Shown here in pieces: positions 1,332 through 63,800 of a DNA stretch of 64,000 nucleotides (its first letter is position 1; every line of letters begins with the position of its first letter). The DNA is taken from positions 186,001 to 250,000 of IMG/VR virus record IMGVR_UViG_3300035661_000001; one strand, 5' to 3'. Under the pieces are notes generated by a model. That model did not search any database and was not told the origin of the DNA. It was given only the letters and a program-made list of their open reading frames with translations. The translations under genes and the position numbers were made by a program.

Positions 1332-1646
1332 ATGAGTTTAAAAATTGTAGATGATTCTTCTTTTGATAAAGAAGTTTTGAAATCTGAGACTCCTGTTCTA
1401 GTTGATTTCTCAGCCGCGTGGTGCGGTCCTTGTAAAAGACAGCTCCCTGTATTAGAGGAAGCTCAAAACGAATATAATGAATCAGTTAAGTTCGTTAAAA
1501 TTGATGTAGATGATAGTCCTGAGACTGCTGCAAAATTCAAAGTAAGAAGTATCCCAACAATTATTTTATTCAAACAAGGGGTACCTTCTAAAAATCATAC
1601 AGGTTTAATGTCAAAATCTGTGTTACAAAAATTTATTAGTGAATGA
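1332..1646 (+). CDS. trxA: Thioredoxin
   Basis: WCGPC active site, IPT cis-Pro motif, 104 aa. Confidence 0.95.
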   Translation: MSLKIVDDSSFDKEVLKSETPVLVDFSAAWCGPCKRQLPVLEEAQNEYNESVKFVKIDVDDSPETAAKFKVRSIPTIILFKQGVPSKNHTGLMSKSVLQKFISE

Positions 1647-2098
1647 TTAAAGGTAAAAAAATGGATAAATATTTTTCTGGAGGAGACGTAATGGAAGATG
1701 GATTGCAATATGCTGCAAAAGCATTTAAGAAAAAATCTTACAAAGGTCTTGAGGATTTTGGTCTCACCGAAGCGTCAGATTATGTTGATTTAAACAAAGA
1801 ATATGGTTTGCTATCATATTACGATGTTTATTCAAATAAAAATAAAATACCAAATCTTTTCAATTTCCTAGCAAATTCGATTGAAGCTGGTCAATGGTCA
1901 CTTCTTGACTTGAATCAGGTACAGATAGATGTTACTCGACATTTTAAGTATCTAGCTTTGAAGAAAGCTTATACAGAATTAGCTGTTGAAGCAAAAGGTA
2001 TTTTGTATTATGATAGTTCAGGTTTTCATATAGAAGAACATACATTTGAAAACTTAGATGAAGTTAAAAGAGCTCTAGCTAATAAAATGTTTCTATGA
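1643..2098 (+). CDS. Hypothetical protein
   Basis: ORF track; operon overlaps; ends VKRALANKMFL. Confidence 0.6.
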   Translation: MIKGKKMDKYFSGGDVMEDGLQYAAKAFKKKSYKGLEDFGLTEASDYVDLNKEYGLLSYYDVYSNKNKIPNLFNFLANSIEAGQWSLLDLNQVQIDVTRHFKYLALKKAYTELAVEAKGILYYDSSGFHIEEHTFENLDEVKRALANKMFL

Positions 2099-8272: not shown

Positions 8273-9016
8273 ATGAGTTCGTATCTATTTGAAAGCGACT
8301 ATAGCGCTGATTCATTACGTTGGATTAGAAAAAAAGAAGAAAGGAAGATTAATTTCAATAGTGTAAAACATTTAAATGCTAACATTAATTTTAATCTTCC
8401 TCTTTTAGAGGACATTCAAAATGAAATCGTAAAAGAAAATGACTCTGCCTTGTCGTATTTTTTTGCAGTAGAGTTTCCATATAAAATGTATCGGATGCAA
8501 AAAATTATTCTGGATAATAAAGATGCTAAATATGCTTTTTTGTTTGCGCAAAACATTAAAGGATGCGATGTAAAAGCTTTACAGCAAGTAGTAATAGAGT
8601 CGAACAAAATTAAATATATTTGCAAATTCGCATGTTTCGTTAAACAAGCAGATTTAAAACCATTAGAATCATTAGTATTAAAATCAAAAAATGTAAAATA
8701 CGCTCACATGTGGTTGAAACACGTAGATAGCGTTAATGTTAATAAGTTCAAAAAAATTATCATAGCTTCCAAAAAACCAAGATATTTATTTGAACTAGTT
8801 AAACATTTAAAAAATCCTAAAGACATATCATTGATTGAAAATTTAATTATTGAAAGCAAATCATTTACTTATATTAAGTTATTTGCTGAAAAAATCAAAT
8901 CAGCTAATGTGGAAAAACTGGAACAAGCAATTTTGGATTCTGGTAATTCTAAAGAGATTAAAAAATTCGCAAAATATGTTAAGAAATCTAAAATGAGAAA
9001 GTTTCTGATAGTATGA
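8273..9016 (+). CDS. Helical-repeat hypothetical protein
   Basis: About 26-aa internal repeats (L..II.SK..KY...FA..VK.A); ends KMRKFLIV. Confidence 0.6.
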   Translation: MSSYLFESDYSADSLRWIRKKEERKINFNSVKHLNANINFNLPLLEDIQNEIVKENDSALSYFFAVEFPYKMYRMQKIILDNKDAKYAFLFAQNIKGCDVKALQQVVIESNKIKYICKFACFVKQADLKPLESLVLKSKNVKYAHMWLKHVDSVNVNKFKKIIIASKKPRYLFELVKHLKNPKDISLIENLIIESKSFTYIKLFAEKIKSANVEKLEQAILDSGNSKEIKKFAKYVKKSKMRKFLIV

Positions 9017-9546
9017 GAAGTTCAGATCATGATTATTATTCTCTCGATGAAATATTAGATTCATATAATTTAGAAATGAAAATTATTTCCACCGTTAGAG
9101 ATAAGTTCCCTGATGCTGGGAAAATGTCATTTATAGGCGACCTTTTTGATGGCTTATCAAAAGGTTTTTTCTATTCCCCCTCTATTGTTACCGATAAGGA
9201 TTTAAAATTAGATTTCAAAGGAAAAAATTGGTATAGTCTTACTGTGACTCCTTATGTCGAAATTTCTTGTTATGATAAGAAAATAAAAGTTTATAATAAT
9301 ATTTTAAAATTCGATTTTTGGAGAGACATATTTGGCATAGAAGTTAAAGAAAATCCCGAAGTACGCTGGAACCATAATGATGAAGTAATGTTGGAATTAG
9401 GTTATAAGCAAGAAGTCATAAAATCAATTTATGACAAAATTCTAGAAAAAATGTCAGAGCACCCTGTTACTAGTAAAGGATATACTGTAAAGTTAATACA
9501 GGATGGTCTTCCAGAATACATTAAGAAATATTTGATACTTTTATGA
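9013..9546 (+). CDS. Hypothetical protein, paralog family with 11624 and 12164
   Basis: Shared K..FPD/N, F.S..V and KK.LI C-terminal patterns. Confidence 0.6.
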   Translation: MRSSDHDYYSLDEILDSYNLEMKIISTVRDKFPDAGKMSFIGDLFDGLSKGFFYSPSIVTDKDLKLDFKGKNWYSLTVTPYVEISCYDKKIKVYNNILKFDFWRDIFGIEVKENPEVRWNHNDEVMLELGYKQEVIKSIYDKILEKMSEHPVTSKGYTVKLIQDGLPEYIKKYLILL

Positions 9547-9638
9547 AAAAAATATATTAAAATTAGAAAGTTGTTATTAAAATTAATGATAAAATAATTA
9601 ATATTCGTCATCAGTCTATTACTAATTATTTAGTAGTA

Positions 9639-9863
9639 ATGCAGGATAAAATAATTGAGTTCGGGGCAGCATCACTAATGAGTTATTCAAATTCAAAATC
9701 ATTGGTTTTAGGATTTCGATGTAACAATGAAATACATTTGGTTGGAATAAATAATATTCGATCTCATTACAAAATTGATCGATTTAATTTTAATCAAAAA
9801 ATTGGTATTGAAATGTTCATGAATGATTGTAAAAATATTTTAAATAAAACTTATACAGATTAA
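9639..9863 (+). CDS. Hypothetical protein
   Basis: ORF track only; follows a very AT-rich gap. Confidence 0.35.
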   Translation: MQDKIIEFGAASLMSYSNSKSLVLGFRCNNEIHLVGINNIRSHYKIDRFNFNQKIGIEMFMNDCKNILNKTYTD

Positions 9864-10174
9864 TCATAAATGAATTTATTCTTTTTTCTTTCTAAATATC
9901 TAAAAGAATTATCATAAAAGTATTTTTCCAATTTTTGTATGTTGCTTTTCTTAGACGAAGCCACCATTCTTTGATTTCTATATATTTTTAATTGTATATT
10001 AAGTGAATCTTCTAATATTGTTTTTATACTTTTGATAAAATCAGTTGATTCTGAATAAATACACCAATATTTTCCACCATCTTTTCTAGTTGAACAACAT
10101 CCGTCTCCATCAAATATGCCTCTAATAAAATGTCTATGAAACTGTTTGTCTATGGTTGGAAATTTTACTATTAA
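9860..10174 (-). pseudogene. C-terminal half of a LAGLIDADG endonuclease (5'-truncated, inverted)
   Basis: LIVKFP...RHFIRGIFDGDG; the upstream in-frame sequence is just the antisense of the RNA ligase fragment. Confidence 0.7.
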
Positions 10175-10562
10175 ATATGATGCTCTACCTGGGTATTTTT
10201 TATTATTTAATGTACGCGACCTTTCTAACATGCAATGGGCAAGTTGGGAGGAAGTTGAATTATGGGCAGAAGGATTGAATTTGCCTGTAGTGCCTGCTCT
10301 TTTCAAAGGACAAGTATCGTCAGAAAAAGAATTAAAAGAACTTACAGAATCATTAATGAATACACCATCTCAGTATGGAGATATAAAAGAAGGTGTAGTT
10401 GTAAGAGTACAAGAATCTTTTGATGATGAAAATTTTTCTTTTTGTGTGGCTAAAATGGTACGGAAAAATTATGTACAAACAAGTACACATTGGAAAGAGC
10501 AAGAAATTGTCAGGAACAAATTGTCTAATAAAATAAGTCTTGACGCCTCAAAATTATATTAA
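10167..10562 (+). pseudogene. C-terminal half of an ATP-dependent RNA ligase (Rnl2-like family), motif I missing
   Basis: IKYDALPGYFLLF, VPALFKG, EGVVVR, VAKMVR, HW; no KxDG motif upstream. Confidence 0.7.
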
Positions 10563-10568
10563 TATGAT
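10540..10568 (+). promoter_or_regulatory. Sigma70-type promoter
   Basis: TTGACG-17 nt-TATGAT upstream of ORF 10608. Confidence 0.6.
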
Positions 10569-10607
10569 ACTATATTAAATAACTAGGGAATAACAAGGGT
10601 ATCATAT

Positions 10608-10847
10608 ATGGGCATGCGCCGTTTTCATTTCGAAAGATCAGAAGATGCGTCAGGTGTCAGTGGTTGTGGAAAAGTAGCAGAAGGTTGTATATTTTTGGAC
10701 ACAGGAGAAATTGTAGTTCATTGGCTAGGAAAGCACAGTTGCATTAATATTTATCATTCTTTGGAAGACGTGGAATATATTCATGGTCACCAAGGAAGAA
10801 CTAGAATAGTTTTTGATGATCCTGAAGATCAGAAGGGTGGAAATTGA
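10608..10847 (+). CDS. Conserved phage hypothetical protein
   Basis: R.EDxSGVSG.G.VAEG...IHGH.G.T pattern. Confidence 0.65.
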   Translation: MGMRRFHFERSEDASGVSGCGKVAEGCIFLDTGEIVVHWLGKHSCINIYHSLEDVEYIHGHQGRTRIVFDDPEDQKGGN

Positions 10848-11194
10848 ATTATAACACTGCTCAATTAATAGCTCTTGCGCAAACATGTCCGCAAGAGTTA
10901 ATGAAGATTTTAATCGACCCCAATGTTGACACCAAAATGTTAACATCTGGGGTTGAAGTTTTTTGTGAAGAAGTTCAAGATGAAAATTTAATCCTTTCAG
11001 CTTTAAGACTACTTCTCAAGAGTAAGAATGCCTTAGTGCGTGAAAGCGCAATTATTGGCGTAACAGGATTTTATATTGACAATATCCCTCCACAAGATAT
11101 ATTAGATAAGTTAAAAATTATGTCTAATGTTGATCCCTCTCCATTTCTAAAAGAATATGCGGGAGATGCATTCGATAAATATAGCGCGGAGTAA
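10844..11194 (+). CDS. HEAT-repeat protein
   Basis: LKSKNALVRESAIIG and DPSPFLKEYA HEAT-like repeats. Confidence 0.6.
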   Translation: MNYNTAQLIALAQTCPQELMKILIDPNVDTKMLTSGVEVFCEEVQDENLILSALRLLLKSKNALVRESAIIGVTGFYIDNIPPQDILDKLKIMSNVDPSPFLKEYAGDAFDKYSAE

Positions 11195-11197
11195 AAT

Positions 11198-11467
11198 ATG
11201 AAAATTTCGGGAACCAACAAGGAAATTGTTGAAATAGTTAATCTATTAGATCCATCATTTAAATGTAAATGTGATCCAAAAATTGGTAGATTTCGTTGTA
11301 CGTCATCTCATGATCGTGATTGTTTATTCGAAGAGCCCTGGGGACCAGAATATGGTATCTATGTTAGGACTTATGACATCGAATATAATGGTAATAAAAT
11401 AAACAACGCCACTTGTATAGATATACAAAATCCCAATTCTAATATTTTAAGTGGTACTGTAAAATGA
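11198..11467 (+). CDS. Hypothetical protein
   Basis: ORF track. Confidence 0.5.
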   Translation: MKISGTNKEIVEIVNLLDPSFKCKCDPKIGRFRCTSSHDRDCLFEEPWGPEYGIYVRTYDIEYNGNKINNATCIDIQNPNSNILSGTVK

Positions 11468-11631
11468 AATTATTAAAATGTAAATTATGTTCCGGTGAAG
11501 TGGATATTATCGGAAACGAACGATCGATTAATAAAAAAATAAAATGTAGAAAATGTGGATTTAGTAATGAAATAGAATCTAAATTCCCAGAAGTATTCGT
11601 TATCAGAAAGAGGCGCCCTGTCGATGTCTAA
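11464..11631 (+). CDS. Small zinc-ribbon protein (55 aa, not in ORF track)
   Basis: MKLLKCKLCSGE...KCRKCGF; overlaps both neighbours in operon fashion. Confidence 0.65.
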   Translation: MKLLKCKLCSGEVDIIGNERSINKKIKCRKCGFSNEIESKFPEVFVIRKRRPVDV

Positions 11632-12157
11632 AACCGCGTATCATTCAGCTGATGAATCTATTATCGATATCAATAACAGAATAGAGAATATGAATTATGT
11701 AATCAGTAAATTACAATTCATAAAATCTGTATTTCCTGATGTTAAAATACAGACATATAAATCTTCTGATGGAAAAGATTGGTTTCAATTCTCATCTAAA
11801 ATGGTAAGTACAAACTATACTAATTATGATATAGAAAATGCTTATCGAGCTATAAATGTTAATTTGTATTCTGAATTAGAATTTGTTTATAATGGAAAAT
11901 CAGAAATTGTTAAGATTTTTTCAGATCCTAAAAAAATAAAATTAGCCAAAGCTTCAACATATCGTAGAAATGGTGAATATGGACGTTACATTATATTTTA
12001 TAAATTCTCATTTAGCAAACATGTTAGTCCTTTAAAAGATGAAGCATTAAGTAAATGTAGAAACGCAATCATGATGTTCATAAAACAACATACAGATTAT
12101 AAGCTTGATACAAAAAATTTAGATGCTCGTTTGAAGAAACTTTTAATTTTTACCTGA
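11624..12157 (+). CDS. Hypothetical protein (paralog family)
   Basis: Ends RLKKLLIFT. Confidence 0.6.
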   Translation: MSKTAYHSADESIIDINNRIENMNYVISKLQFIKSVFPDVKIQTYKSSDGKDWFQFSSKMVSTNYTNYDIENAYRAINVNLYSELEFVYNGKSEIVKIFSDPKKIKLAKASTYRRNGEYGRYIIFYKFSFSKHVSPLKDEALSKCRNAIMMFIKQHTDYKLDTKNLDARLKKLLIFT

Positions 12158-12163
12158 GAGTAT

Positions 12164-12658
12164 ATGGCTAAAATTTTAGATAGAGATAATCACATCTTAA
12201 CATTAGAAGAAGACTTAGCTACATTAAAAATAGTTCGAGAAATTTTTCCTAATGTTCAATTAAAATTAGATACTTCAAATAACTCTTATGTTTTTGCAGA
12301 TAAATCTGTTAACAGATTGTTTAACTCTTTTGAATTATTTAATTATAGTTCAGAAGTAAGATTAAGTGTAGAATATTTGATTAAATTTGAACACGCCGGT
12401 AAAGAAAAAGTTGTATCTGTAGGTTGCGTTCCTAAAAGCTGCTTATTATTGCGTGTAACAGGTCAAACTTATGATAATAATGTACAAGACATTTATTATC
12501 ATAAATCAATTTTTAAATCTCGTGATAAAAATATACAACACAAGTTATCTTCTGCATGCAACTTGCATGTGATAGAAACTATTAAAAAACACCCGCAAGC
12601 TAAACTACATCGAGATACATTTCCAGAAAAGCTAAAAAAATTATTAATTTTTGCTTAA
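12164..12658 (+). CDS. Hypothetical protein (paralog family)
   Basis: Ends KLKKLLIFA. Confidence 0.6.
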   Translation: MAKILDRDNHILTLEEDLATLKIVREIFPNVQLKLDTSNNSYVFADKSVNRLFNSFELFNYSSEVRLSVEYLIKFEHAGKEKVVSVGCVPKSCLLLRVTGQTYDNNVQDIYYHKSIFKSRDKNIQHKLSSACNLHVIETIKKHPQAKLHRDTFPEKLKKLLIFA

Positions 12659-12694: not shown

Positions 12695-14089
12695 ATGACA
12701 TTCGATGGCAAATATCAAGATTGGAATCAAAAAAGAATAAAAGGTATCCTAGAATTTTATGGTCACAAATTTCTCTATTATAAAAAGATTCTAGATTTAG
12801 GTTGTGGTCATGCGGATATTAGTGGAGTTTTTTATAGATTAGGAGCTGATGTAACTGCTGTTGATGCTCGTCAAGAGCATTTAAAAATAGTAAATAAAAA
12901 ATATAATGGCATTAAAACTATTAAGGCAGATTTAGATTCCGAATGGCCATTTGCTAGAAATTATTTTGATATTGTTTTAGATTTAGATTTACTTTGCCAT
13001 TTGAATAATTATGAAGATCATCTTCGTAAAGTTTGTAGCATTACTAATCATTTAATATTAGAAACCGCAGTCTGTGACTCAGACGATCCCAACAAAGTAA
13101 TATTACTTCCTGAAAATAAATCCATTTATGACGCATCTATAAATGGAGTAGGTAGTAGACCAACTGCTGCTGCTATTGAACGGATATTAACTGAATGTGG
13201 AATGAATTTTCGCAGGCAAGATAAAAATAGATATAATTCTAATTCATATGTATATGATTGGGAAAATAAAAATGATGATGAATGCGATATTAATAAAAGA
13301 CGCCTTTGGTTCGCAGTAAAAAATACCAGTAATATTCAATTTGCTTTATCTACAAATCCCACTATTAAAATAAATGAATCGCAATTCGGCGCCCCATTAC
13401 AAAATTCAAATCTACCATTACAAAATTCAAATCTACCATTACAGAGAACCCCAAGAATTAGTAGTAGTAGTAGTAGTAGTATTCAATCACCTATAAATAA
13501 TTTTATCACTAATCCTAGCAACCATAGTCCTAAAATTAGATTGTTTTATAATTATTATGTTGATGAAAATCCGCAAAGAAGAAAAGAAATAGATTTTTGT
13601 TTAAAGCAAAATATTAATAATCCATTAATTGATATAATTGTTCTTGAATCAGAAATAAATCCTACATTTGATTTTTTTATAGAAAAAATCAATCTTCTAT
13701 CAGGTGAAAATGATATTAATATAATTTGTAATTCTGATATATTTTTAGATAATACAATACAATTAGTTAAAAATATTAATAAAAAAGAATTTTACGCATT
13801 AAGTCGATATGATTGGAATAATAATTCATCATCATTTTTTGATATGGCTAACAGTCAGGACACTTGGATTTTTAGAGGAAAAGTTGATAATGTCAACGCT
13901 AATTTTCAATTGGGTAAATTAGGATGTGATAATAGAATAGCTCATGAATTTAAAATGGCTGGATATACGGTCACAAATCCAAGTAAATCAATTAAAACGT
14001 ATCATGTACATAACTCTAATATACGCAGATATACCGAAAATGAAAGAATTAATGGAACATATTTGTTTATAAAACCTACGAGCTTATAA
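12695..14089 (+). CDS. Class I SAM methyltransferase fused to a putative glycosyltransferase-like domain
   Basis: ILDLGCGHA motif I; Ser/Pro/Asn-rich linker; C-terminal NSDIF, SQDTWIF, GCDNRIA. Confidence 0.7.
   Translation: MTFDGKYQDWNQKRIKGILEFYGHKFLYYKKILDLGCGHADISGVFYRLGADVTAVDARQEHLKIVNKKYNGIKTIKADLDSEWPFARNYFDIVLDLDLLCHLNNYEDHLRKVCSITNHLILETAVCDSDDPNKVILLPENKSIYDASINGVGSRPTAAAIERILTECGMNFRRQDKNRYNSNSYVYDWENKNDDECDINKRRLWFAVKNTSNIQFALSTNPTIKINESQFGAPLQNSNLPLQNSNLPLQRTPRISSSSSSSIQSPINNFITNPSNHSPKIRLFYNYYVDENPQRRKEIDFCLKQNINNPLIDIIVLESEINPTFDFFIEKINLLSGENDINIICNSDIFLDNTIQLVKNINKKEFYALSRYDWNNNSSSFFDMANSQDTWIFRGKVDNVNANFQLGKLGCDNRIAHEFKMAGYTVTNPSKSIKTYHVHNSNIRRYTENERINGTYLFIKPTSL
13394..13480 (+). 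repeat. In-frame tandem repeats in the linker: 21-bp unit x2.4 and (AGT)7
   Basis: CCATTACAAAATTCAAATCTA repeats encode PLQNSNL; AGT x7 encodes poly-Ser. Confidence 0.9.
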
Positions 14090-23021: not shown

Positions 23022-23478
23022 ATTAATCTTATCTATAGAACTTGTACCAAAATCTAGTTGGCTTAATAATGTAAGAGCCATTGTATCTCAGCAACAATGG
23101 GACATCATTCGAAGTAGAGTTTATTCAAAATTTTATAATATGTGCGAAATATGTGGTGGTGTTGGTCCTAAACATCCCGTAGAATGCCATGAAGTTTGGT
23201 CATATGATGATGAAACTAATATTCAAAAATTAGAAAGTATGACAGCGTTATGCCCTAATTGTCATATGGTTAAACATATAGGATTAGCACAAATTAACGG
23301 TAATTATCAAAAGGCTTTAAGCCATTTTATGTCAATAAATGGCTTGGGTAAAGACAAAGCGGTTAAATTAATCAATGATTCTTTCGTTTTATGGCAGAAG
23401 AGATCTAAGAAAAAATGGACGATAGACGTATCTTCTCTAAAAGAATTTGGTATTGATATAGAAAGTTTTAAAAAATGA
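23014..23478 (+). CDS. HNH-like nuclease domain protein
   Basis: CEICG, ECHE.W.Y, LCPNCHMVKH. Confidence 0.75.
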   Translation: MSKLILSIELVPKSSWLNNVRAIVSQQQWDIIRSRVYSKFYNMCEICGGVGPKHPVECHEVWSYDDETNIQKLESMTALCPNCHMVKHIGLAQINGNYQKALSHFMSINGLGKDKAVKLINDSFVLWQKRSKKKWTIDVSSLKEFGIDIESFKK

Positions 23479-23900
23479 AATGTCCGACTTGCTTATCTAT
23501 TATGAAATGTATTTCTGCTATAAATCCTGTTCCAGGTCAACCTGGAAAAGATCGCATGGACCTACATTGTTATAACAGAGAGGATCCAAAATCACCTAAT
23601 ATGTGTAGAGCAAGAGCACATATGGGTGTAATAACGGAAGATCCTAAAGAATGGGTATGTCATGAATATAATCTTTCATTTAAACATAATGAAAATTTAT
23701 TTTATTTAATTGGTTATGATAAATTAGTGGATCCTTATTTTCAGAGAAGACCTGTCGAGGAAAGCTATACTATTTTATCTGATGTTTTTGGAAGAGAAAT
23801 GGTAAAAGTAAATTTTGTTCCAATTTCGACTGGTGATGATATGCATGAACGGGCATATGATTTGTTTCATAGCCTACCGGATCAGGCACCAATTTCCTAA
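23475..23900 (+). CDS. Hypothetical protein; last 10 codons derive from a tRNA remnant
   Basis: CPTC N-terminus; stop TAA lies in the anticodon loop of the tRNA-Arg relic. Confidence 0.6.
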   Translation: MKCPTCLSIMKCISAINPVPGQPGKDRMDLHCYNREDPKSPNMCRARAHMGVITEDPKEWVCHEYNLSFKHNENLFYLIGYDKLVDPYFQRRPVEESYTILSDVFGREMVKVNFVPISTGDDMHERAYDLFHSLPDQAPIS

Positions 23901-28021: not shown

Positions 28022-28618
28022 CTATAACAAAAAAGTCTTTTTTAATCCCCAGGGAGTGACTTCCTGGGCATATATTTCATAATTTATTTCGTACTTGTTA
28101 CCCATCTGCACAGAAAATGGATAGAACTTTGGTTTTTCCATAGTTAAAGGGTTATTAGAAATAATATACCCATACCCGCCATAATACTTATTATGCCATG
28201 GCTGACCATCAATTTTTGATACAAAAGATACTTCTATATTATCAATTAGATAATCTTTTTTCATTTGTGGAGTTACCCCTCCATTTACAATAATAGTAGA
28301 TGTTTGATTTTTAAATTGTAATAAAATTACATTAGGTTGTAATTTTAACCACTGAAAAGCTTCGCCAGAAGTATTTTTACATGATTTTAAATCATCACTT
28401 CCCAAATTATAAATAACATTCTTTGAAATAGAAGATTTAAAATTTAAAATATTATTTGGAATATCACTAATCCCTGGGTGACATAATCCAGAATTAATAA
28501 TTACAACTTTATATTGTTTGGCAAGATCATTTATCTTCAAGATTTTATCTGAATTATTATAAATAGGTCCAACAACTAAAATATTATAATCGATATTGTT
28601 GATAATGATTCCTGCCAC
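28022..28618 (-). CDS. Degenerate calcineurin-like metallophosphoesterase (pseudo-enzyme)
   Basis: Motif spacing is kept (VVGPIY, YNLGSDD, IIVNGG) but the metal ligands are substituted. Confidence 0.5.
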   Translation of the reverse strand: MAGIIINNIDYNILVVGPIYNNSDKILKINDLAKQYKVVIINSGLCHPGISDIPNNILNFKSSISKNVIYNLGSDDLKSCKNTSGEAFQWLKLQPNVILLQFKNQTSTIIVNGGVTPQMKKDYLIDNIEVSFVSKIDGQPWHNKYYGGYGYIISNNPLTMEKPKFYPFSVQMGNKYEINYEIYAQEVTPWGLKKTFLL

Positions 28619-31478: not shown

Positions 31479-32063
31479 TTGAATACAATTGTAACAGAGA
31501 CAACCGATCATGGAGAGTTTCCAGTAGATATCTACCAAAAATTATCAAATGATAGAATTCTATTCATCTGTGATGTTATTGATGATAAATTAGCTACTGA
31601 TATCGTGGCTACCTTATTACTTAAAGATTCTGAAAATCCTGAAGAAAAAATTACTTTATTTATAAATTCAGAAGGTGGAGACATTCGTAATGTCTTAATG
31701 ATTTATGACATGATGTGTTTGGTACAAGCACCAATTGAAACAGTATGTATTGGATCTGCTATGGATGAAGCTGCAATTATTCTAGCTGCCGGCACACCTG
31801 GTATGAGATTTGCTACTAAAAATTCAGTAATATCAATTAATCAATTAACCCATGATTGGGTAAATGTTTCAGACTTAACGGATGCTAAAAAAGTTCTGGA
31901 TCAATTCTTAAGTGATAATAAGAAAATGATGGAGATTTTGGCAAAATCTTGTAGTAAAACATATAAACAGGTAATAGAAGATTTTAATCGTAGAGTTTTC
32001 ATGAATTGTAATCAAGCTGTTAAATATGGCTTAATTGATAAGGCGGTATCGGTTAAAAAATGA
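31479..32063 (+). CDS. ClpP-family protein, catalytically inactive (ClpR-like)
   Basis: ClpP fold motifs (LSNDRILF, INSEGG); catalytic Ser position reads GSAMDEA and His position reads ISINQL. Confidence 0.85.
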   Translation: MNTIVTETTDHGEFPVDIYQKLSNDRILFICDVIDDKLATDIVATLLLKDSENPEEKITLFINSEGGDIRNVLMIYDMMCLVQAPIETVCIGSAMDEAAIILAAGTPGMRFATKNSVISINQLTHDWVNVSDLTDAKKVLDQFLSDNKKMMEILAKSCSKTYKQVIEDFNRRVFMNCNQAVKYGLIDKAVSVKK

Positions 32064-32653
32064 ATCATCTAATAGGAAAACTTCATCAGCATGACACGCC
32101 ACAATCTAGTATGTTTCCGGGATATATGGAAACTTATATTAGGTTATCAAAAAATAGAATAATTTTTCTAAACGAAAATATAACTAAACAGTCAGCATCT
32201 GAATTGTCAGCTTTATTATTGTATTACGATAATTTATCTCAAGAAGATATCTCTATTTATTTACACTGTGACGGCGGAGATGCTGACGGATTAGCTAATA
32301 TTTATGATATAATGCAAATGGTAAGATCTCCAATAAAAACTATTTGTATTGGTAAATGTTACTCTGCCGCAGCAGTCATATTGGCAGCAGGAACTCCAGG
32401 AGAAAGATACGCATTTAAGCATTCAAAAGTTATGATACATGGTATTCAGGCTGGATTCCCCATCCCCGGACATGATATGACGAATAGCAAAAGTTATTAT
32501 GAGTTTCTCAAAGAGAACAATGATAGTGTTATGAGAATATTAGCACATCATACGGGTCATCCTTTAGATGAAATAAAACAAGCGTGTACCCGTGATGTTT
32601 GGTTGTCAGCACAGGAAGCAAAAAATTACAATATTGTAGACCACGTTTTATGA
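32060..32653 (+). CDS. clpP: ATP-dependent Clp protease proteolytic subunit (triad intact)
   Basis: GKCYSAA (Ser), VMIHG (His), TRDVWLSAQEA (Asp). Confidence 0.9.
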   Translation: MNHLIGKLHQHDTPQSSMFPGYMETYIRLSKNRIIFLNENITKQSASELSALLLYYDNLSQEDISIYLHCDGGDADGLANIYDIMQMVRSPIKTICIGKCYSAAAVILAAGTPGERYAFKHSKVMIHGIQAGFPIPGHDMTNSKSYYEFLKENNDSVMRILAHHTGHPLDEIKQACTRDVWLSAQEAKNYNIVDHVL

Positions 32654-40051: not shown

Positions 40052-41368
40052 ATGAAAATTAAAGAATATAAAGAATTTTTAACGCCAACGTTATTAGAAG
40101 CGCAAGAAACCCTTTCAAAAGAAATTTTGGATTCGTTAACAGAAATATCTGTTCAAGCATTAGGTATTGAGGACCCTAGACCAACTGCCAATTTTATTGA
40201 TTTAATGAAATGGACCGAAGCAAATTTCAAAAAATTCTTAAAAGATCAAGATCATATAAATAGATATGTTCACAATAGAATTATTATTGATGGACAGTTT
40301 TTGAAATTTTGTAATGAAAATTCTGTTACTGTAAAATGTTTGTATAAAGATTCTATTATCTCTTGGAAAACAGACCATGATTTTGAGAAATTTTTTGTAC
40401 AAGGAGTATTTCTTGTCAAAACTAAAAACGTAGAATTTCTTCAGGCAGCCCTTTTTCATAAGGGAAATCAAAATGAAGATGAAGTTAGTTTTTTTACAGT
40501 TGTATCTAATAGTAATTATGAAGAATATCTTAAATTAAGAAATTCATTTGATGAATGGATACAAAAAAGAGATAGAAGTAATTTACATATTAGAGTTGTA
40601 GACGGAGAAGATATTCCGTATACTAAAGATCATACATGGGGCGATCTGTTTTTACCTACAGAAATTAAAACGGAATTACAGGCACTAGTTGAGAATTTCT
40701 TAGCTTCAAAAGAATTCTATAATTCTAATAGAATACCTTGGAAAAGAGGAGTATTATTATACGGTCATCCTGGTAACGGCAAGACATCTATTATTAAAAC
40801 TGTTATGTCGATGTATAATTTTAAACCAGTGACTGTCGTACCCGGAGCACCGGATGAAGCCATTAGAGAAGCTTTTACATACGCTGAAGAACAAAGTCCT
40901 TCCTTACTGTATTTTGAAGATTTAGATTCCATTCTAGAAAAGAATGATGCTTCTTCATTCTTGAATTTAATGGACGGCATTTCTGCGAAGAATGGACTGT
41001 TAGTCATTGCTACGGCTAATGATGTGCGCAAACTAAAATCTAACATTACAGACAGACCATCAAGATTTGATAGAAAATTTGAAATTCCCCAACCAAATCC
41101 AGATATGGCTCATATATACATTAAGAGGTGGTTTGGAAACATGATTACCGCGAGAAAATGTAGAGAGCTTGCAAAAATATCCGTTAAGTCGGGATTTTCG
41201 TATGTTCATTTGAAGGACTTATATATTTCTGCAATGTTTGCTGCTTTATCACAAAACCGTAAAGTTCCAACAGAGAGAGATATAGATAGTGCATTGAATC
41301 GTTTAATCAAGGAAAAAACCCCGTTAACTGGTTCGAAGATTGTAGACACTGACAGATATTTCAAGTAA
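40052..41368 (+). CDS. Classic-clade AAA ATPase
   Basis: RGVLLYGHPGNGKT, FEDLD, second region of homology RPSRFDR. Confidence 0.88.
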   Translation: MKIKEYKEFLTPTLLEAQETLSKEILDSLTEISVQALGIEDPRPTANFIDLMKWTEANFKKFLKDQDHINRYVHNRIIIDGQFLKFCNENSVTVKCLYKDSIISWKTDHDFEKFFVQGVFLVKTKNVEFLQAALFHKGNQNEDEVSFFTVVSNSNYEEYLKLRNSFDEWIQKRDRSNLHIRVVDGEDIPYTKDHTWGDLFLPTEIKTELQALVENFLASKEFYNSNRIPWKRGVLLYGHPGNGKTSIIKTVMSMYNFKPVTVVPGAPDEAIREAFTYAEEQSPSLLYFEDLDSILEKNDASSFLNLMDGISAKNGLLVIATANDVRKLKSNITDRPSRFDRKFEIPQPNPDMAHIYIKRWFGNMITARKCRELAKISVKSGFSYVHLKDLYISAMFAALSQNRKVPTERDIDSALNRLIKEKTPLTGSKIVDTDRYFK

Positions 41369-41387: not shown

Positions 41388-41729
41388 TTGATAGTTATGT
41401 CGAAAGATATTTCAAAGAAATTCAAGAAAAATTCATTTAAAAAGGCGTCGAAAGGGGGTGAATCCGTAAGCCAGGACTCTCATTCCAATGAAGCTGTATT
41501 AGCACAACCATTGGAGGTCAAAGTCTATAACAATAACTTTGATAAAGCTCTTAGAGCTTTTAGAGCTTTAGTACAAAAAGAAAGAATCTTATCTGTATAT
41601 AAAGAAAAACAGGCATACGAAAAACCTTCACAAAGAAGACGTCGTAAGAAGAATGAAGCGAAACGAAAAATTTTAGAACTACAGTCCGATAGGTCTAAAG
41701 TTAAGAGGTCAGAATCCTCTGAAAAATAA
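41388..41729 (+). CDS. rpsU: Ribosomal protein bS21 with N-terminal extension
   Basis: EVKVYNNNFDKALRAF...YEKPSQRRRRK. Confidence 0.88.
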   Translation: MIVMSKDISKKFKKNSFKKASKGGESVSQDSHSNEAVLAQPLEVKVYNNNFDKALRAFRALVQKERILSVYKEKQAYEKPSQRRRRKKNEAKRKILELQSDRSKVKRSESSEK

Positions 41730-45285: not shown

Positions 45286-45807
45286 ATGATCATAAAAAAT
45301 AATGAAGAGCTTTTAAGGGTCAAATGTGAAGACGTTCTTCCCGAAGAAGTTGGAGAATTAGTATTGGTTTTAGAAAAAGAACTAGAACAATCTGGAAAAT
45401 TAGGCGTCCCTGGAATAGGTCTGGCAGCACCACAAATAGGAATAGCTAAAAATATTGCCATAGTGAGATTAGGTAATATTAATTTTGATTTAGTAAATGC
45501 GAAGATATATAAAGGATATGACCAAACAATTTTTAGACAAGAAGGCTGTTTATCATTTCCCGGAAGAATTGAAGATACATTAAGATATCAAGAAGTACAT
45601 ATAACTAATAATTTAGTTTATCCTCACAGTATGATTGCAGCTGGATTAGTAGCTGTATGTTGCCAACATGAAATTGATCATTTGAATAGTTCATTATTTA
45701 TGGATCATGCTGTACCCAAACCTCCAATCAAGAAAAACAAAATTGGACCGAATGATCCATGTGTATGTGGATCAAATAAAAAATACAAAAAATGTTGCCA
45801 AAAATGA
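45286..45807 (+). CDS. def: Peptide deformylase with C-terminal SEC-C motif
   Basis: GIGLAAPQIG, EGCLS, HEIDH; GPNDPCVCGSNKKYKKCC. Confidence 0.93.
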   Translation: MIIKNNEELLRVKCEDVLPEEVGELVLVLEKELEQSGKLGVPGIGLAAPQIGIAKNIAIVRLGNINFDLVNAKIYKGYDQTIFRQEGCLSFPGRIEDTLRYQEVHITNNLVYPHSMIAAGLVAVCCQHEIDHLNSSLFMDHAVPKPPIKKNKIGPNDPCVCGSNKKYKKCCQK

Positions 45808-47552: not shown

Positions 47553-48064
47553 TCAGGAAAGCTGATTCTATTCCTATTGTTAAATTGTTTCGTCATTATC
47601 GTTTAAGATTAGACGATAATAATAGAAAAATAATTTGTCCATTCTCTAGCCATCAAGGAGGGAGGGAGAGCTCTCCCTCCTTTTACTATTATCCTAACAC
47701 AAATAGTTTTTGGTGTTTTGGATGTAAAACAGGGGTGCGTTGTTGTGATTTTGTTTCAAATGTAGATAAAATTTCAAGAGTGAAAGCTGCTTTTAAGATT
47801 CTTGAACTATTCAAGAGTGATGTTGATGAAGATGCAATATTAATTGATCGTGAAAATTTCTCTGAAAAACTAGAAATAATGTTGATGTTTTCTAGTAAAG
47901 TTAGAGAATTTCGTAGAAATTCTGCAGATGAAAAATCACTTCAATTTATTGAAGAATTGTGCGCAGTATATGATGCTATAAATGTAAAACATTCATTAAA
48001 TAATGAGGCGTTACGCTCAGTTGTTGATCAGTTAATTGAAAAAATAAATTCGTATAAACTATGA
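47444..48064 (+). CDS. CHC2 (DnaG-type) zinc-finger protein without TOPRIM domain
   Basis: CPFSSH...SPSF.YYP.TNSFWCFGC. Confidence 0.8.
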   Translation: MYKLSDSLGSVGDSEVSRYYGDSTEVTTGKKYYQDLIRKADSIPIVKLFRHYRLRLDDNNRKIICPFSSHQGGRESSPSFYYYPNTNSFWCFGCKTGVRCCDFVSNVDKISRVKAAFKILELFKSDVDEDAILIDRENFSEKLEIMLMFSSKVREFRRNSADEKSLQFIEELCAVYDAINVKHSLNNEALRSVVDQLIEKINSYKL

Positions 48065-48307
48065 AAAAAATATATTGTCCAATATGTAATATGAAATTAA
48101 AAGTTGATCCTGCTGACGGCGTGACAATTTGCTCTTCTAATATAAATCATTATTTTTTCAGAAAATATATACGAGGTTGTTAACCTGGAAAATTATTCTG
48201 TGAGAATGGCTAATAACATTGTTTATCTATATAAAGATGAAATATGTGTTATGGAGTTTCCAGGAAAATTAGATTTAACTTCAAAAAATTTGATAGATAA
48301 AATTAAA
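48061..48307 (+). pseudogene. Small hypothetical gene broken by a T6 frameshift (48153-48158) and fused at its 3' end to a NUMOD3 remnant
   Basis: MKKIYCPICN...NHYF joins SENIYEVVNLENYSVRMANN...IDKIK after removal of one T. Confidence 0.5.
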
Positions 48308-48769
48308 ATATCCAAATCACATATTGGAAACAAATTATCAAAAGAGACCAAATTAAAATTATCAGCAGCCCATGTTGGAAAAAACATAGTTTGGAAACTA
48401 AAAATAAAATGTTAAAAATTAATAAGAAGATAAAGAAAAAATATACAGTTATTTATCCTAGTTTGACTGGTAAAAAAAATAAGTGAAGAAACAAGACGTA
48501 ACTTACGTGAAGTTAATCTGGGTAAGAAAGCCAGTCAAGAAACTAAAGAAAAAATGTCCCAATCTATGATTGGTGAAAATAATGGGATGTTTGGTACTTC
48601 AAGCGAAAAAGCTTCATGTGCCAAATTAACTCAAATACAGGCTGATGAGATCCGAAAAAGGTATTCGGAAGAAAAAATATCTTCAATTCAATTAGCTAAA
48701 GAGTATAATGTTAGCAAGAAAACTATACTAAATAACAAAACTTATAAGGATGTTCTATGGGTAAAGTAA
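48308..48769 (+). pseudogene. Decayed NUMOD3-repeat homing endonuclease DNA-binding tail (no catalytic domain)
   Basis: Repeats SKETKLKLS, HSLETKNKM, SEETRRNL, SQETKEKMS joined across A6 (48379-84) and A8 (48472-79) frameshifts; terminal helix-turn-helix. Confidence 0.75.
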
Positions 48770-60700: not shown

Positions 60701-60820
60701 TATAGTGGTTTAGAACTTGTATTCCCTGACAGACATACGACTTCTACTTTATTAGAAGGAAGTGCTTTTTTATAAGCCTGATATGTTGTGTTAAAATACT
60801 TTAACAATATAAGGTTACCT

Positions 60821-63800
60821 ATGACTGATTTTGTGTCTTTACATAATCAAACGTATTTCTCTATTTTGGATTCATTAGTTTCACCTAAAGAATTATTTCT
60901 TCGAGCCAAAGAATTAGGACAAACGGCAATTGCAATTACAGACCATGGAACATTAGCCTCTGCATGGGATGCTTTAAAAGCTTCCAGAGAAACAGGGGTT
61001 AAGTTAATTATGGGCTGCGAATGTTATTTCAAAAATTCAGCAGCATCAGTTGATGAAGAAAAATTTCGACATTTAATACTTTTAGCTAAAAATGCCGTTG
61101 GGTATCGTAATCTTTTAACTATTAATAAAAAAGGATTTGATCAAGGATTAAATACTGGTAAAAGAGTTTACCCAACTGTTGATTGGGCTTTATTAGAGAA
61201 ACATTCTGAAGGTTTAATTTGTCTTACTGCATGCGGTAATGGTATTATATCTCAATTACTTACTCATGGTAAGTTTGACGAAGCTGAAAAAACCCTTTTA
61301 AAACTAAAAAGTATTTTTCAAGATAATTTAGGCATTGAAATTCAACCTAATAATATGGATCGTGGATCGACTTTCTTTAGTGATAAGATTGATCAAAGAT
61401 TTTTGAATAGAAGATTAATTGAGTTGGGTAGCAAACATGATGTTAAAGTTATCGCTGCATGCAATACTCATTATTTGAAAAAAGAACATCATGATATTCA
61501 TGATGTTTTCTTAGCGATTGGATCGCATCAACCAAAATATTCTAATTTTAGATTGAAATATAATGTTCCTGATTTTTACCTTAAATCAGGAGAAGAAGTA
61601 AAAAATTTCTTTGCAAGGAATTTTGGAGAAGAGTTTTCTGAACAAATATGCGCGAATACTTTATATTTCTCTTCACTATGTGAAATTCCAGATTGGATTG
61701 ATCCGAAATTTTCAAATCCATCAGGAAAAGAATTGCCAATATTTCCAGTTAAATCCGAAGGAGATTATCAGACTTTTTTAAAATGGACAGAGACATTATC
61801 TGATGATTTGAAAAAATTGGAAGAAGATAAATTGTATCTTCGATACAAGTGTGTTATGAAATTTGATTCTAGAGTTAAAAACTTAACTGACGAACAATTA
61901 GTAACTTATCAGTTACGTATTGAAGAAGAGTTGGACGTATTAGAATATCACGGTTTTTCCAGTTACATGTTAATTGTTGCTGATTATATTGATTGGGCAA
62001 GAAGTAATGATATTGCTGTTGGTGAAGGTAGAGGTTCAGTAGGCGGTTCTTTGATAGCTTTCTTATTAGGCATTCATCAGGCAGATCCTATTAAATATAG
62101 TTTGATTTTCGCTAGATTTCATAATAAAGAAAAGTCAAGTTTCCCAGATATTGATACTGATTTCGCACCATCGGGTCGGGCATTAGTTCAAAATTATTTA
62201 AGAAATAAATATGGAGAAGATAATGTTGCTCACGTATCTAACGTAAATACAATTACACCAAAAGTTTATGTAAGAGATATTGCTCGTTCTTGTGAACTAG
62301 GTGGATCCAAAGAAGAAGCGATTAAGATAGGAAATGATGTAGCCGATTGTATTCCAGCAGATGTCCATTCTATTGATGATGCTTTTAATAGGGTTCCTCT
62401 TTTTGCGGAGTATTGCAAAAAATATCCAGAGTTCATTAAATACAAAGATATTTGCGGTAAGTTTCGTGCATGGAGCACTCATGCAGGAGGTATTATCATT
62501 TCAGCCAGACCATTAACTGGTTTAGTTCCATTACGTCGAGATAAAGATGGTGCCTTAGCTATTGAATACGATAAAGATAAAGCTGAAGAAAATGGTCTAG
62601 TTAAAATGGATACATTAGGCTTATCTACTTTGGATATCATTGGTCAAATAATGCAGTTAATTAAAGAGTCAGGCAAGGAAATGCCTCCTGATATTTTTGA
62701 TTATGAATCATACGATCAAGAAACTTACAAAGTAATTACATCTGGTGATACTTTTGGTGTATTTCAGTTGGGCACAAGCGGTGGTACTATTGATTTATGT
62801 CGTCGGATTAAACCAAAATCAATCAATGATATTAGTTACATAAATTCATTAGCTAGACCATCAGCCAGAGATATGCGTGATGATTTTATTTCCACCAAAG
62901 ATGGTAAAAAACCATTTGCTTTATTACATCCTACATTAGGAAGAGCTTTTAATAATACATATGGTTTCGGGTTGTATGAAGAATCATTAATGTATCTTGC
63001 TCAAGATGTAGCGGGTTGGAGTTTGCATTCTGCAGATCGTCTTAGAAAATTAACGAAAGAAAAAGGTAAAAATCCTAAAAAGGCTCAACAGTGGAGAAGT
63101 GAATTTATTGCTGATGGAATTAAAAATGATGTTCCTGAAGAAACTGTTAAGAGAATTTGGGATGAAGTTATCGATTTATTTCAGGGCTATGGTTTTAATC
63201 AGTCTCATAGTATTTTATACTCTATGACTAGTTATAAAACTGCTTATCTCAAAGCTCATTATCCTGTCGAATTTCTCATGGCTAATTTGATGGCAGAAGT
63301 AAAATCAAATACTCCTGATGCCAAACCAAACATTGAGAAAATCAAGAAAGAATTAAGAGATCGTAAGGTCAAGTTATTACCACCTGATATTAACAAGTCA
63401 CAATTATCTTATACTTTATTAGATGACAATCAATTATTAACAGGATTAGATTCTCTTAGAGATGTAGGTGATGATGCGATCAAAGATATTATTTCCAAAC
63501 GACCATTCAATAACTTTTTTGATTTCATGGTTAGAGTAGATTCCAGAAAAACTAGAGCTAATGCTATCGCGGCATTAGCTGCGGCGGGAAGTATGGATCA
63601 TTTTGGGATACCCAGAAAATTGATTTTTCTATATTGCTCAGATTATAGAAAAAAATTACAGGTTTGGTTGAAGAAACACGATCCAAAAGTAGAAGAATTT
63701 CAATATCCTTGGCCAAAAGAATCGGAATGGAAAATTCACGAGTTATATGCTCTAGAACAACATTATCTTGGAGAATCATTTGTATGTAAGTCAGCCGATG

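What the first reader, a model, noticed from the sequence alone, without database searches (positions are those of the whole stretch)
8273..12658. Shared basic-then-hydrophobic C-terminal motif across unrelated and paralogous small proteins
Seen C-termini: KMRKFLIV (9016), YIKKYLILL (9546), RLKKLLIFT (12157), KLKKLLIFA (12658), GLKKTFLL (28022, minus strand) and ALANKMFL (2098). The pattern [KR]x[KR][KT][FYL]L[IL]x-COOH sits on proteins of different apparent folds. Two genes truncated by foreign DNA stop where such a tail might be expected (IDKIK| at 48307, DLFH| at 23869). Inference: a common docking, degron or packaging signal, for example for the phage Clp machinery, a portal or ejection pathway, or a hub protein.
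Basis: partly seen in the sequence, partly recalled or inferred. Interest (0 to 1): 0.6.

Follow-up and report, generated by a model that had tools for sequence, protein, structure and literature searches.

The report
Shared C-terminal tail in huge-phage proteins
About one in twenty proteins of this 452-kb phage and its relatives, most of them small, fast-evolving and of unknown function, end in the same strictly placed tail (basic residue, hydrophobic residues, phenylalanine, one last residue), which looks like a common handle read by one still unknown partner.

Summary
The window lies in a complete 451,956-bp phage genome.

- **Consensus:** [RK] at -9, hydrophobic at -8 and -5, Phe at -2 (64 of 67 tails), then exactly one more residue.
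- **Frequency:** 27 of 654 ORFs here carry it, 40 of 636 in a relative with 66% median protein identity, and 42 of 650 in a 43%-GC relative scored out of sample. About 0.5 hits per genome are expected by chance.
- **Carriers:** mostly small N-terminal CxxC zinc-ribbon proteins in tandem arrays of 10 to 24 genes. The tail also sits on bodies that share no detectable sequence or predicted fold with them.
- **Conservation:** tails are better conserved than bodies, the reverse of ordinary genes, and synonymous codons are scrambled.
three are true members (9546, 12157, 12658), one is borderline (2098), and two are look-alikes (9016, 28022). Both "truncated" genes are real family members that lost the tail.
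- **Databases:** no Pfam, PHROG, PDB or cultured-phage relative was found.

Function is inferred only. I favour a C-terminus-dependent docking handle or degron. The phage ClpP/ClpR pair is a candidate partner but was not tested. The one complex prediction gave no answer.

The parts
11624..12157 (+). 177-aa carrier without cysteines. The tail is the last 12 codons, 12119-12154 (flavour 1, ends LLIFT).
   Evidence: Matrix score 18.2. Orthologs at 35-38% identity in G001 and G003 keep the last 8 residues almost unchanged. Metagenome homologs down to 37% identity keep it too.
12164..12658 (+). 164-aa paralog of the gene before it. The tail is 12620-12655 (ends LLIFA).
   Evidence: Score 21.7. In family alignment A2, 5 of the 13 invariant columns lie in the last 7 residues. 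AlphaFold model pLDDT 84.6, with the tail as a short helix (residues 155-163) of lower confidence, 59-77.
9013..9546 (+). 177-aa carrier with a variant tail (Leu in place of Phe at -2). The tail is 9508-9543.
   Evidence: Score 12.1, above the 4.7 threshold. No ortholog in G001 or G003. Absent from the syntenic place in G001.
8273..9016 (+). 247-aa protein that looks like helical repeats by eye, with a look-alike tail. Not a supported member.
   Evidence: Scores -22.8 in register and matches only at offset 2. The G003 ortholog has one extra last residue, so the tail is not anchored.
1643..2098 (+). 151-aa protein with a borderline flavour-2 tail (R at -9, K at -4, F at -2, L at -1).
   Evidence: Score 3.7, just under threshold. 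The G001 ortholog (56% identity) keeps the last four residues.
28022..28618 (-). Not a member.
   Evidence: Score -23.3. No ortholog in G001 or G003.
23475..23900 (+). 141-aa zinc-ribbon family member (CxxC at the N-terminus) that has lost its tail.
   Evidence: Reciprocal best hit G1_317498 (166 aa, 32% identity) ends in a scoring tail, whereas this gene ends in unrelated residues after ...DLFH.
48061..48307 (+). Broken small zinc-ribbon family gene. The CPIC N-terminal piece (48061-48183) and a shifted frame carry the start of the tail module, which is cut after ...IDKIK at 48307.
   Evidence: ORF listing. The residues after the cut resemble NUMOD-type homing-endonuclease repeats, judged by eye and not tested.
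31479..32063 (+). ClpR-like (catalytically dead) Clp protease subunit. Candidate partner, untested.
   Evidence: Pfam CLP_protease E 7e-46. By my reading of the sequence, Asp and Asn stand where the catalytic Ser and His should be.
32060..32653 (+). ClpP with the catalytic Ser and His in place. Candidate partner, untested.
   Evidence: Pfam E 4e-45; sequence. The same gene pair is present in G001, G003 and G006.
40052..41368 (+). 438-aa classic-clade AAA+ ATPase whose own C-terminus is D-[RK]-Y-F-[KQ]. Possible unfoldase or hub, untested.
   Evidence: Pfam AAA E 2e-18. The C-terminus is kept in G001, G003 and G006, with one extra residue in G006.

Best explanation
The tail is a short recognition peptide at the very end of the protein: [RK]-hydrophobic-x-x-hydrophobic-x-hydrophobic-Phe-x-COOH. 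It comes in two flavours, K-[TK]-L-L-[LI]-F-[STA] and [LM]-K-[AV]-F-[WL]. I propose that one common partner reads it together with the free carboxyl end, and that it serves as a constant handle on about 30 to 40 small, fast-diverging phage proteins per genome whose variable bodies do the specific work.

Most carriers descend from one expanded family of N-terminal C4 zinc-ribbon proteins arranged in translationally coupled tandem arrays. The same tail also sits on bodies with no detectable relation to that family.

Shown:
- the motif exists;
- it is strictly anchored to the last residue;
- it is conserved at the protein level more strongly than the bodies;
- it spreads across dissimilar bodies and across a clade of huge phages.

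Inferred:
- it binds a partner;
- the partner is a single shared one.

The most concrete candidate is AAA+/Clp proteolysis. The tail could act as a C-terminal degron that times removal of these proteins, or as a tether that brings bound host proteins to the protease. The phage encodes a ClpP/ClpR pair and an AAA+ ATPase. I put the Clp-specific reading at roughly 0.15 to 0.2. The confidence given below is for the general 'handle read by a common partner' reading.
For: - **Enrichment and strict register:**
- **Profile search:** a profile of only the C-terminal module, searched against 1.84 billion proteins, returned 13 hits. Twelve end at the protein's last residue and one ends a single residue short.
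- **Tail over body:** G000-G001 carrier orthologs are 41% identical overall but 58% in the last 10 residues. Other genes are 64% overall and 41% in the last 10.
- **Codons:** at identical tail residues the same codon is used barely more often than codon usage predicts (591 vs 510, 1114 vs 990, 867 vs 815). Each gene therefore keeps the tail by selection on the peptide, not by recent copying.
- **Dissimilar bodies:**
- **Structure:** in the cysteine-free family the tail helix has lower model confidence than the body, as expected for an exposed element.
- **Not amphipathic:** the hydrophobic moment is no higher than for other C-termini, while net charge is +2.2 and the last five residues are hydrophobic.
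- **Clp co-occurrence:** ClpP/ClpR and the AAA+ ATPase are present in every complete relative that has the arrays.
- **Precedent:** the ssrA degron of ClpX must be C-terminal (PMC12373786), and ClpXP C-terminal three-residue degrons vary between bacteria (PMC10782952).
Against: - No partner was identified and no binding was shown. The one complex prediction (the two adjacent paralogs) gave no answer.
- All genomes examined belong to one phage clade, so co-occurrence with Clp genes carries little weight.
- In the zinc-ribbon family the tail is the end of a longer conserved module of about 25 residues, and it is modelled as a confident helix. This fits a structural role as well.
- Many 'unrelated' bodies may simply be diverged relatives; alignment depth was only 8 sequences.
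- No expression or virion data exist. No RNA runs hold the region.
- The host is unknown.
Confidence: 0.45

Rival explanations
1. Family hallmark only. The tail is a structural or self-association helix inherited from one ancestor by all carriers, whose bodies diverged beyond recognition. It packs on the protein's own sheet or pairs carriers with each other, and no outside partner reads it.
For: About a third of carriers in G000 and G001, and most in G003, keep the N-terminal CxxC. Alignment A3 shows four invariant cysteines plus the tail in one family. The tail is the end of a conserved module of about 25 residues. It is modelled as a helix with pLDDT about 80. A gene inside the zinc-ribbon array carries the second tail flavour, which links the two flavours.
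Against: A helix packing on its own core should co-vary with that core, yet bodies change fast while the tail stays. Two carrier families have different predicted folds and align only over 12 columns. The end falls exactly one residue after Phe in nearly all copies, which a purely internal helix does not require. The tail is not amphipathic. The hetero-pair prediction gave no answer, which counts neither way.
Confidence: 0.25
2. Virion cargo tag. The tail directs these proteins into the capsid, for ejection into the host, by docking on the capsid interior, scaffold or portal. This would work like encapsulin cargo-loading peptides or the T4 capsid-targeting sequence.
For: Only the general features fit: a constant terminal peptide on many different small proteins, strictly terminal.
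Against: Carriers lie outside the block of large, presumably structural genes at genome 260-360 kb, apart from two weak hits. No cleavage motif was noticed. No sequence likeness to known cargo peptides (from memory). No proteomics exist.
Confidence: 0.1
3. Membrane-targeting sequence. The basic and hydrophobic tail anchors the proteins on the inner face of the host membrane, as the C-terminal helices of MinD and FtsA do.
For: Net charge +2.2 with hydrophobic last residues, often Trp or Phe near the end.
Against: The helical hydrophobic moment is 0.28-0.30, no higher than the 0.27-0.31 of other C-termini. The strict one-residue register is not a feature of known membrane-targeting helices (from memory).
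Confidence: 0.07
4. Sliding-clamp binding motif. The x-L-x-hydrophobic-F core near the C-terminus plugs into the host beta clamp, which the phage's DnaE-type polymerase must borrow.
For: The phage has a Pol III alpha (window 60788-64339) but no detectable dnaN. Positions -6 to -2 share the L, hydrophobic and F positions of the QL[SD]LF consensus (consensus from memory).
Against: Gln is not among the five commonest residues at position -6, where K, T and N lead. The phage polymerase itself ends in an acidic DnaE-like tail and has no match to this motif. Thirty to forty clamp binders per genome would have no precedent.
Confidence: 0.05
5. No feature at all: a chance product of a Lys/Leu/Ile/Phe-rich, AT-biased proteome, or a DNA or RNA signal that happens to lie at gene ends.
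For: The window is only about 30% GC.
Against: Internal positions of the same proteins, shuffles and reversed N-termini give about 0 to 0.5 hits against 27 to 42 observed. The motif is present at 43-45% GC. Codons differ between copies.
Confidence: 0.01

Closest known systems
HbYX motif of proteasome activators (hydrophobic-Tyr-X at the C-terminus of PAN/Rpt ATPases, PA200, PI31 and assembly chaperones)
   Same: A hydrophobic residue, then an aromatic residue at -2, then one free last residue. It is strictly C-terminal and shared by unrelated proteins that dock on one ring (from memory).
   Different: Phe instead of Tyr (64 of 67; Tyr once). There is a conserved basic residue at -9. No proteasome or HslV gene in the phage. 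Docking of such tails on ClpP is not known.
ssrA-type C-terminal degrons and the SspB XB tether of ClpX
   Same: Short terminal peptides that bring proteins to a Clp unfoldase. The ssrA tag must be C-terminal (PMC12373786). C-terminal degrons differ between bacteria (PMC10782952). The phage carries ClpP/ClpR.
   Different: The tail does not end in Ala-Ala or a similar pair. The XB peptide works at any position in a chain (PMC12373786), whereas this tail is strictly terminal. No ClpX-like gene was identified in the phage, though none was searched for specifically.
T4 capsid-targeting sequence of internal proteins, and encapsulin cargo-loading peptides
   Same: One constant terminal peptide on otherwise dissimilar, polymorphic small proteins (from memory).
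   Different: The T4 signal is N-terminal and is cleaved off. Encapsulin peptides have another consensus. There is no evidence that the carriers are in virions.
Poxvirus ankyrin/PRANC (F-box-like) and BTB-Kelch multigene families
   Same: Expanded, arrayed, fast-evolving viral gene families with a variable target-binding part and a constant C-terminal docking element near a genome end (from memory).
   Different: A eukaryotic ubiquitin system. The docking element there is a folded domain, not a tail of about 10 residues. The likeness is analogy only.
Uncharacterised proteins of 'uncultured Caudovirales phage' in UniProt/BFVD (A0A6J5R... series)
   Same: Same predicted fold as the 194-aa zinc-ribbon carrier (Foldseek E 5e-7 to 5e-5, TM 0.44-0.57). 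These are probably true family members.
   Different: They carry no annotation or function, and I did not inspect their tails.

Membership tests
Beta-clamp binding motif (QL[SD]LF / QLxLxL) | Gln at the first motif position | tested here: not met
   Position -6 is mostly K, T or N. Gln is not among the five commonest residues in 67 tails.
Beta-clamp binding motif (QL[SD]LF / QLxLxL) | The same motif on the replicative polymerase of the same system | tested here: not met
   The phage DnaE has no Q-x-x-hydrophobic-F match and ends in an acidic tail.
HbYX proteasome-docking tails | Penultimate Tyr | tested here: not met
   Phe in 64 of 67 tails, Tyr in 1.
HbYX proteasome-docking tails | A 20S or HslV-type ring as partner | tested here: not met
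   No PF00227 match in the complete phage genome. A host ring could not be examined because the host is unknown.
ssrA-like ClpX C-degron | Terminal small non-polar pair (such as L-A-A) with a free carboxylate | tested here: not met
   The last two residues are F then L, W or S. Other bacteria use other terminal triplets (PMC10782952), so a host-specific degron is not excluded.
MinD/FtsA-type membrane-targeting helix | Amphipathic helix with a raised hydrophobic moment | tested here: not met
   Moment 0.28-0.30 against 0.27-0.31 for the other 1223 C-termini.
PDZ-ligand C-termini | A PDZ domain partner in the system | tested here: not met
   No PF13180 match in the phage genome. Other PDZ models and the host were not examined.
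T4-type capsid-targeting sequence | N-terminal position with a protease cleavage site | tested here: not met
   The motif is at the C-terminus only. Reversed N-termini give 0 hits.
Any curated protein family (Pfam, PHROGs) or solved structure | A significant profile or fold match for the carriers | tested here: not met
   About 35 carriers were scanned and none reached a curated cut-off. PDB profile searches were empty. Foldseek on PDB found nothing at E<=0.001. The best VIA Z was 5.8, within the range the tool calls common arrangements.
Huge-phage zinc-ribbon/tail family defined here | N-terminal CxxC, a second Cys pair, and the terminal tail, in tandem arrays | tested here: met
   A3 has C14, C17, C98 and C101 invariant. 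Arrays occur at genome 405.7-410.3 kb, in L032 and L034-L040, and in G003 at 403.7-417.2 kb. The window carriers at 11624-12658 lack the cysteines and share only the tail.

The most novel reading that the evidence does not exclude
The carriers are a phage-encoded library of adaptors. Each variable body grips a different host protein, for instance a defence or housekeeping factor. The common tail plugs the complex into a Clp-type AAA+ protease built around the phage's own ClpP/ClpR, so that many host targets are destroyed through one handle. This would be a bacterial-virus counterpart of the poxvirus ankyrin/F-box and BTB-Kelch families.
Probability: 0.08. Interest if true: 0.9.

Novelty: new variant of a known kind. 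Interest (0 to 1): 0.6.

Why it matters
Huge phages carry hundreds of small genes that no database explains. Here 4 to 6% of the proteome of three genomes of 450 to 480 kb turns out to be linked by a single ten-residue terminal signature that selection guards more tightly than the rest of each protein. This gives one experimental entry point, a synthetic peptide or a tail-tagged reporter, to dozens of orphan genes at once. It could also identify the hub these phages use, whether a protease, a chaperone or a virion part. [quoted passage not shown] The motif is also a simple annotation marker for this phage clade.

Tried and rejected
- **Complex prediction:** the two adjacent paralogs (window 11624-12154 with 12164-12655) gave no answer, score 0.00 against a mark of 0.34, folded without alignments. 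It counts neither for nor against binding.
- **Candidate hubs in the phage genome:** beta clamp (PF00712, PF02768), PDZ (PF13180) and proteasome/HslV (PF00227) are all absent.
- **Host identification:** close bacterial relatives of phage bS21 found nothing. ClpP gave one weak partial hit in a groundwater candidate-phylum genome, which is uninformative. Sequencing runs place the phage in microbial-mat and sediment metagenomes, with no RNA runs.
- **DNA-level signal or ribosome-site constraint:** rejected, because codons differ between copies and I saw no Shine-Dalgarno-like content in the tail codons.
- **Recent gene conversion as the source of similarity:** rejected overall. One adjacent pair (genome 408269 and 408835) shares 8 of 9 codons and may be a local exception.
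- **Amphipathic membrane helix:** not supported.
- **Family and fold searches:** Pfam, PHROGs, PDB by sequence and fold, ESM Atlas and GenBank phages gave no named relative. The word-based homolog search for a 117-aa carrier found only itself.
- **Papers:** two searches for a described motif of this kind found nothing relevant.
- **Stop-codon read-through in the GC-rich part:** inconclusive, because removing any stop lengthens frames there.

Full report
**Setting.** The window is bases 186,001-250,000 of a complete 451,956-bp virus record with direct terminal repeats. ARAGORN finds 41 tRNAs, including a CTA-anticodon suppressor. PHROG and Pfam hits mark it as a phage: SbcC-like nuclease, topoisomerase I, bS21, peptide deformylase, and a DnaE-type polymerase. 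The core is 30-34% GC, but bases 1-80 kb and 400-452 kb reach 42-56%.

**The observation.** All six quoted C-termini are present. I called ORFs genome-wide (654 non-overlapping ORFs of at least 60 aa).
A looser core occurs 11 times, ten of them terminal, against 0.01 expected.
- New carriers appeared far outside the window, at genome 122, 170, 183 and 408-409 kb.
- Codons differ between copies, so the conservation is in the peptide.

**True shape of the motif.**
- An unbiased scan of the last 12 positions singles out Phe at -2 and Arg at -9.
- There are two flavours. One ends K-[TK]-L-L-[LI]-F-[STA]. The other ends [LM]-K-[AV]-F-[WL].
- A 12-residue matrix, thresholded so that internal positions predict 0.5 terminal hits, finds 27 carriers here and 40 in relative G001. 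Cross-training gives 34 and 29.
- Hits pile up at offset 0 (67). Offsets 1 to 8 hold one to three hits each, and several of those are second matches inside the same tails.
- Over the 67 tails, -9 is R or K in 61, -8 is L, I, F or M, -5 is L, M or Y, -2 is F in 64, and -1 is L, W or S.
The tail at 2098 is borderline. Those at 9016 and 28022 are not members.

**Relatives.**
- G001 (446,541 bp; median ortholog identity 66%) and G003 (480 kb; 43% GC; median best-hit identity 51%) were fetched whole.
- G003, scored with the matrix trained on the other two genomes, has 42 carriers among 650 ORFs. Its Phe count at -2 is 66 against 28 expected.
- A profile of the last 36 residues, searched against 1.84 billion proteins, returned 13 hits. 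Twelve end at the protein's last residue and one ends a single residue short. The new hits are CxxC proteins of 66-201 aa.
- A tighter module alignment (A4) found ten more viral contigs. Four contigs of 200-480 kb carry 10-13 tail-bearing genes within 8 kb.
- A 45%-GC metagenome contig shows the same array.
- GenBank phages hold no relative. BFVD holds uncharacterised look-alikes from uncultured phages.

**Who carries it.**
- Most carriers are one superfamily. It has an N-terminal helix, a CxxC pair, a second Cys pair (C14, C17, C98 and C101 invariant in A3), a variable beta-rich middle, and a conserved end module of the form LP..(P)DFSD..KL.NK[IL]KT...FS.
- These genes stand in overlapping, same-strand arrays next to the GC-rich part of the genome in all three complete genomes.
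- The window pair 11624-12658 has no cysteines and a different predicted fold: a long N-terminal helix, a sheet, and a second helix. It aligns to A3 only over the last 12 columns.
- With the last 14 residues removed, the 67 carriers form 50 BLAST clusters.

**Selection.**
- Carrier orthologs between G000 and G001 are 41% identical overall but 58% identical in the last ten residues. Other genes show 64% and 41%.
- Only 12 of 27 and 14 of 40 carriers have reciprocal orthologs, so turnover is high.
- Same-codon use at identical tail residues barely exceeds expectation from codon usage.
- In A2, five of the 13 invariant columns lie in the last seven residues.

**The truncated genes.**
- Window 23475-23900 is a CxxC member whose G001 ortholog ends in a full tail.
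- Window 48061-48307 is a broken CPIC member. It is cut within the tail module and followed by residues that look, by eye, like a homing-endonuclease remnant.

**Mechanism.** Nothing here was tested at the bench. Strict anchoring one residue after Phe, tail-over-body conservation, dissimilar bodies, a positive charge, a hydrophobic end and the lack of amphipathicity fit a peptide that a common partner reads together with the carboxyl terminus.
- The phage encodes an active ClpP next to a ClpR-like dead paralog.
- It also encodes a classic AAA+ ATPase whose own end, D-[RK]-Y-F-[KQ], is conserved.
- All three genes are present in the complete relatives.
- These facts make Clp-type proteolysis the most concrete candidate, but co-occurrence within one clade is weak evidence.
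- Clamp, PDZ and proteasome genes are absent.
- The single complex job gave no answer.
- The structural-hallmark rival stays serious, because the tail is part of a longer conserved module in the main family.

**Novelty.** No curated family, solved structure or paper found here describes the motif or the family. Shared terminal peptides on diverse proteins are a known kind of thing (HbYX, ssrA, capsid and encapsulin tags). This one differs in sequence and setting, and its scale of 30-40 genes per genome is larger than for any shared terminal peptide I know of.

Noticed in passing
genome 1-80,000 and 400,000-451,956 (outside the window); G001 20-120 kb; G003 420-480 kb: Each of the three complete genomes has a block of about 60-130 kb at 42-59% GC inside an otherwise 30-43% GC genome. 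The zinc-ribbon array sits at its edge. In G000 the ORFs there are shorter (median 112-126 aa against 178). TAG ends 13% of ORFs there against 4% elsewhere.
   Followed up: partly
genome 80,119-80,195 (outside the window): A tRNA with anticodon CTA, an amber suppressor, among the 41 tRNAs. Whether TAG is recoded in part of the genome could not be settled by frame-length counts.
   Followed up: partly
window 9860-10562: An RNA-ligase-like gene is 5'-truncated. Only the last 138 aa remain (10146-10562, +). The missing N-terminal part would, by eye, carry the ligase KxDG motif, and it is replaced by a minus-strand ORF (9860-10306) with what looks like a LAGLIDADG motif. G001 has the intact 233-aa gene (L002:3030-3731).
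   Followed up: partly
window 31479-32653: Adjacent ClpR-like and ClpP genes. By my reading, the first has Asp and Asn at the catalytic Ser and His positions. The pair is conserved in G001, G003 and G006.
   Followed up: partly
window 40052-41368: An AAA+ ATPase (PF00004) with a 230-aa N-terminal domain of unknown kind and a conserved C-terminal D-[RK]-Y-F-[KQ] that resembles proteasomal-ATPase tails.
   Followed up: partly
window 41388-41729 and 45286-45807: A phage-encoded ribosomal protein bS21 (PHROG E 1e-8) and a peptide deformylase (E 1e-22), which suggest that the phage intervenes in host translation.
   Followed up: no
window 60788-64000 (gene runs on to 64,342): A 1184-aa DnaE-type Pol III alpha with PHP domain. 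No dnaN was detected in the genome, so the phage presumably borrows the host clamp.
   Followed up: partly
window 12695-14089: A 464-aa protein with an N-terminal SAM-methyltransferase domain, an internal short tandem peptide repeat (NSNLPLQ twice) and a serine run, directly after the carrier pair. The gene is syntenic in G001, where I did not see the repeat.
   Followed up: no
window 48311-48769: Short ORFs with what look like NUMOD-type repeats and a helix-turn-helix-like piece. They appear to be remnants of a homing endonuclease that broke a zinc-ribbon family gene.
   Followed up: no
genome 408,269-409,176 (outside the window): Two adjacent carriers with BLAST-unrelated bodies share 8 of 9 codons in the tail against 4 expected. 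This may be a local gene conversion of the tail segment.
   Followed up: partly
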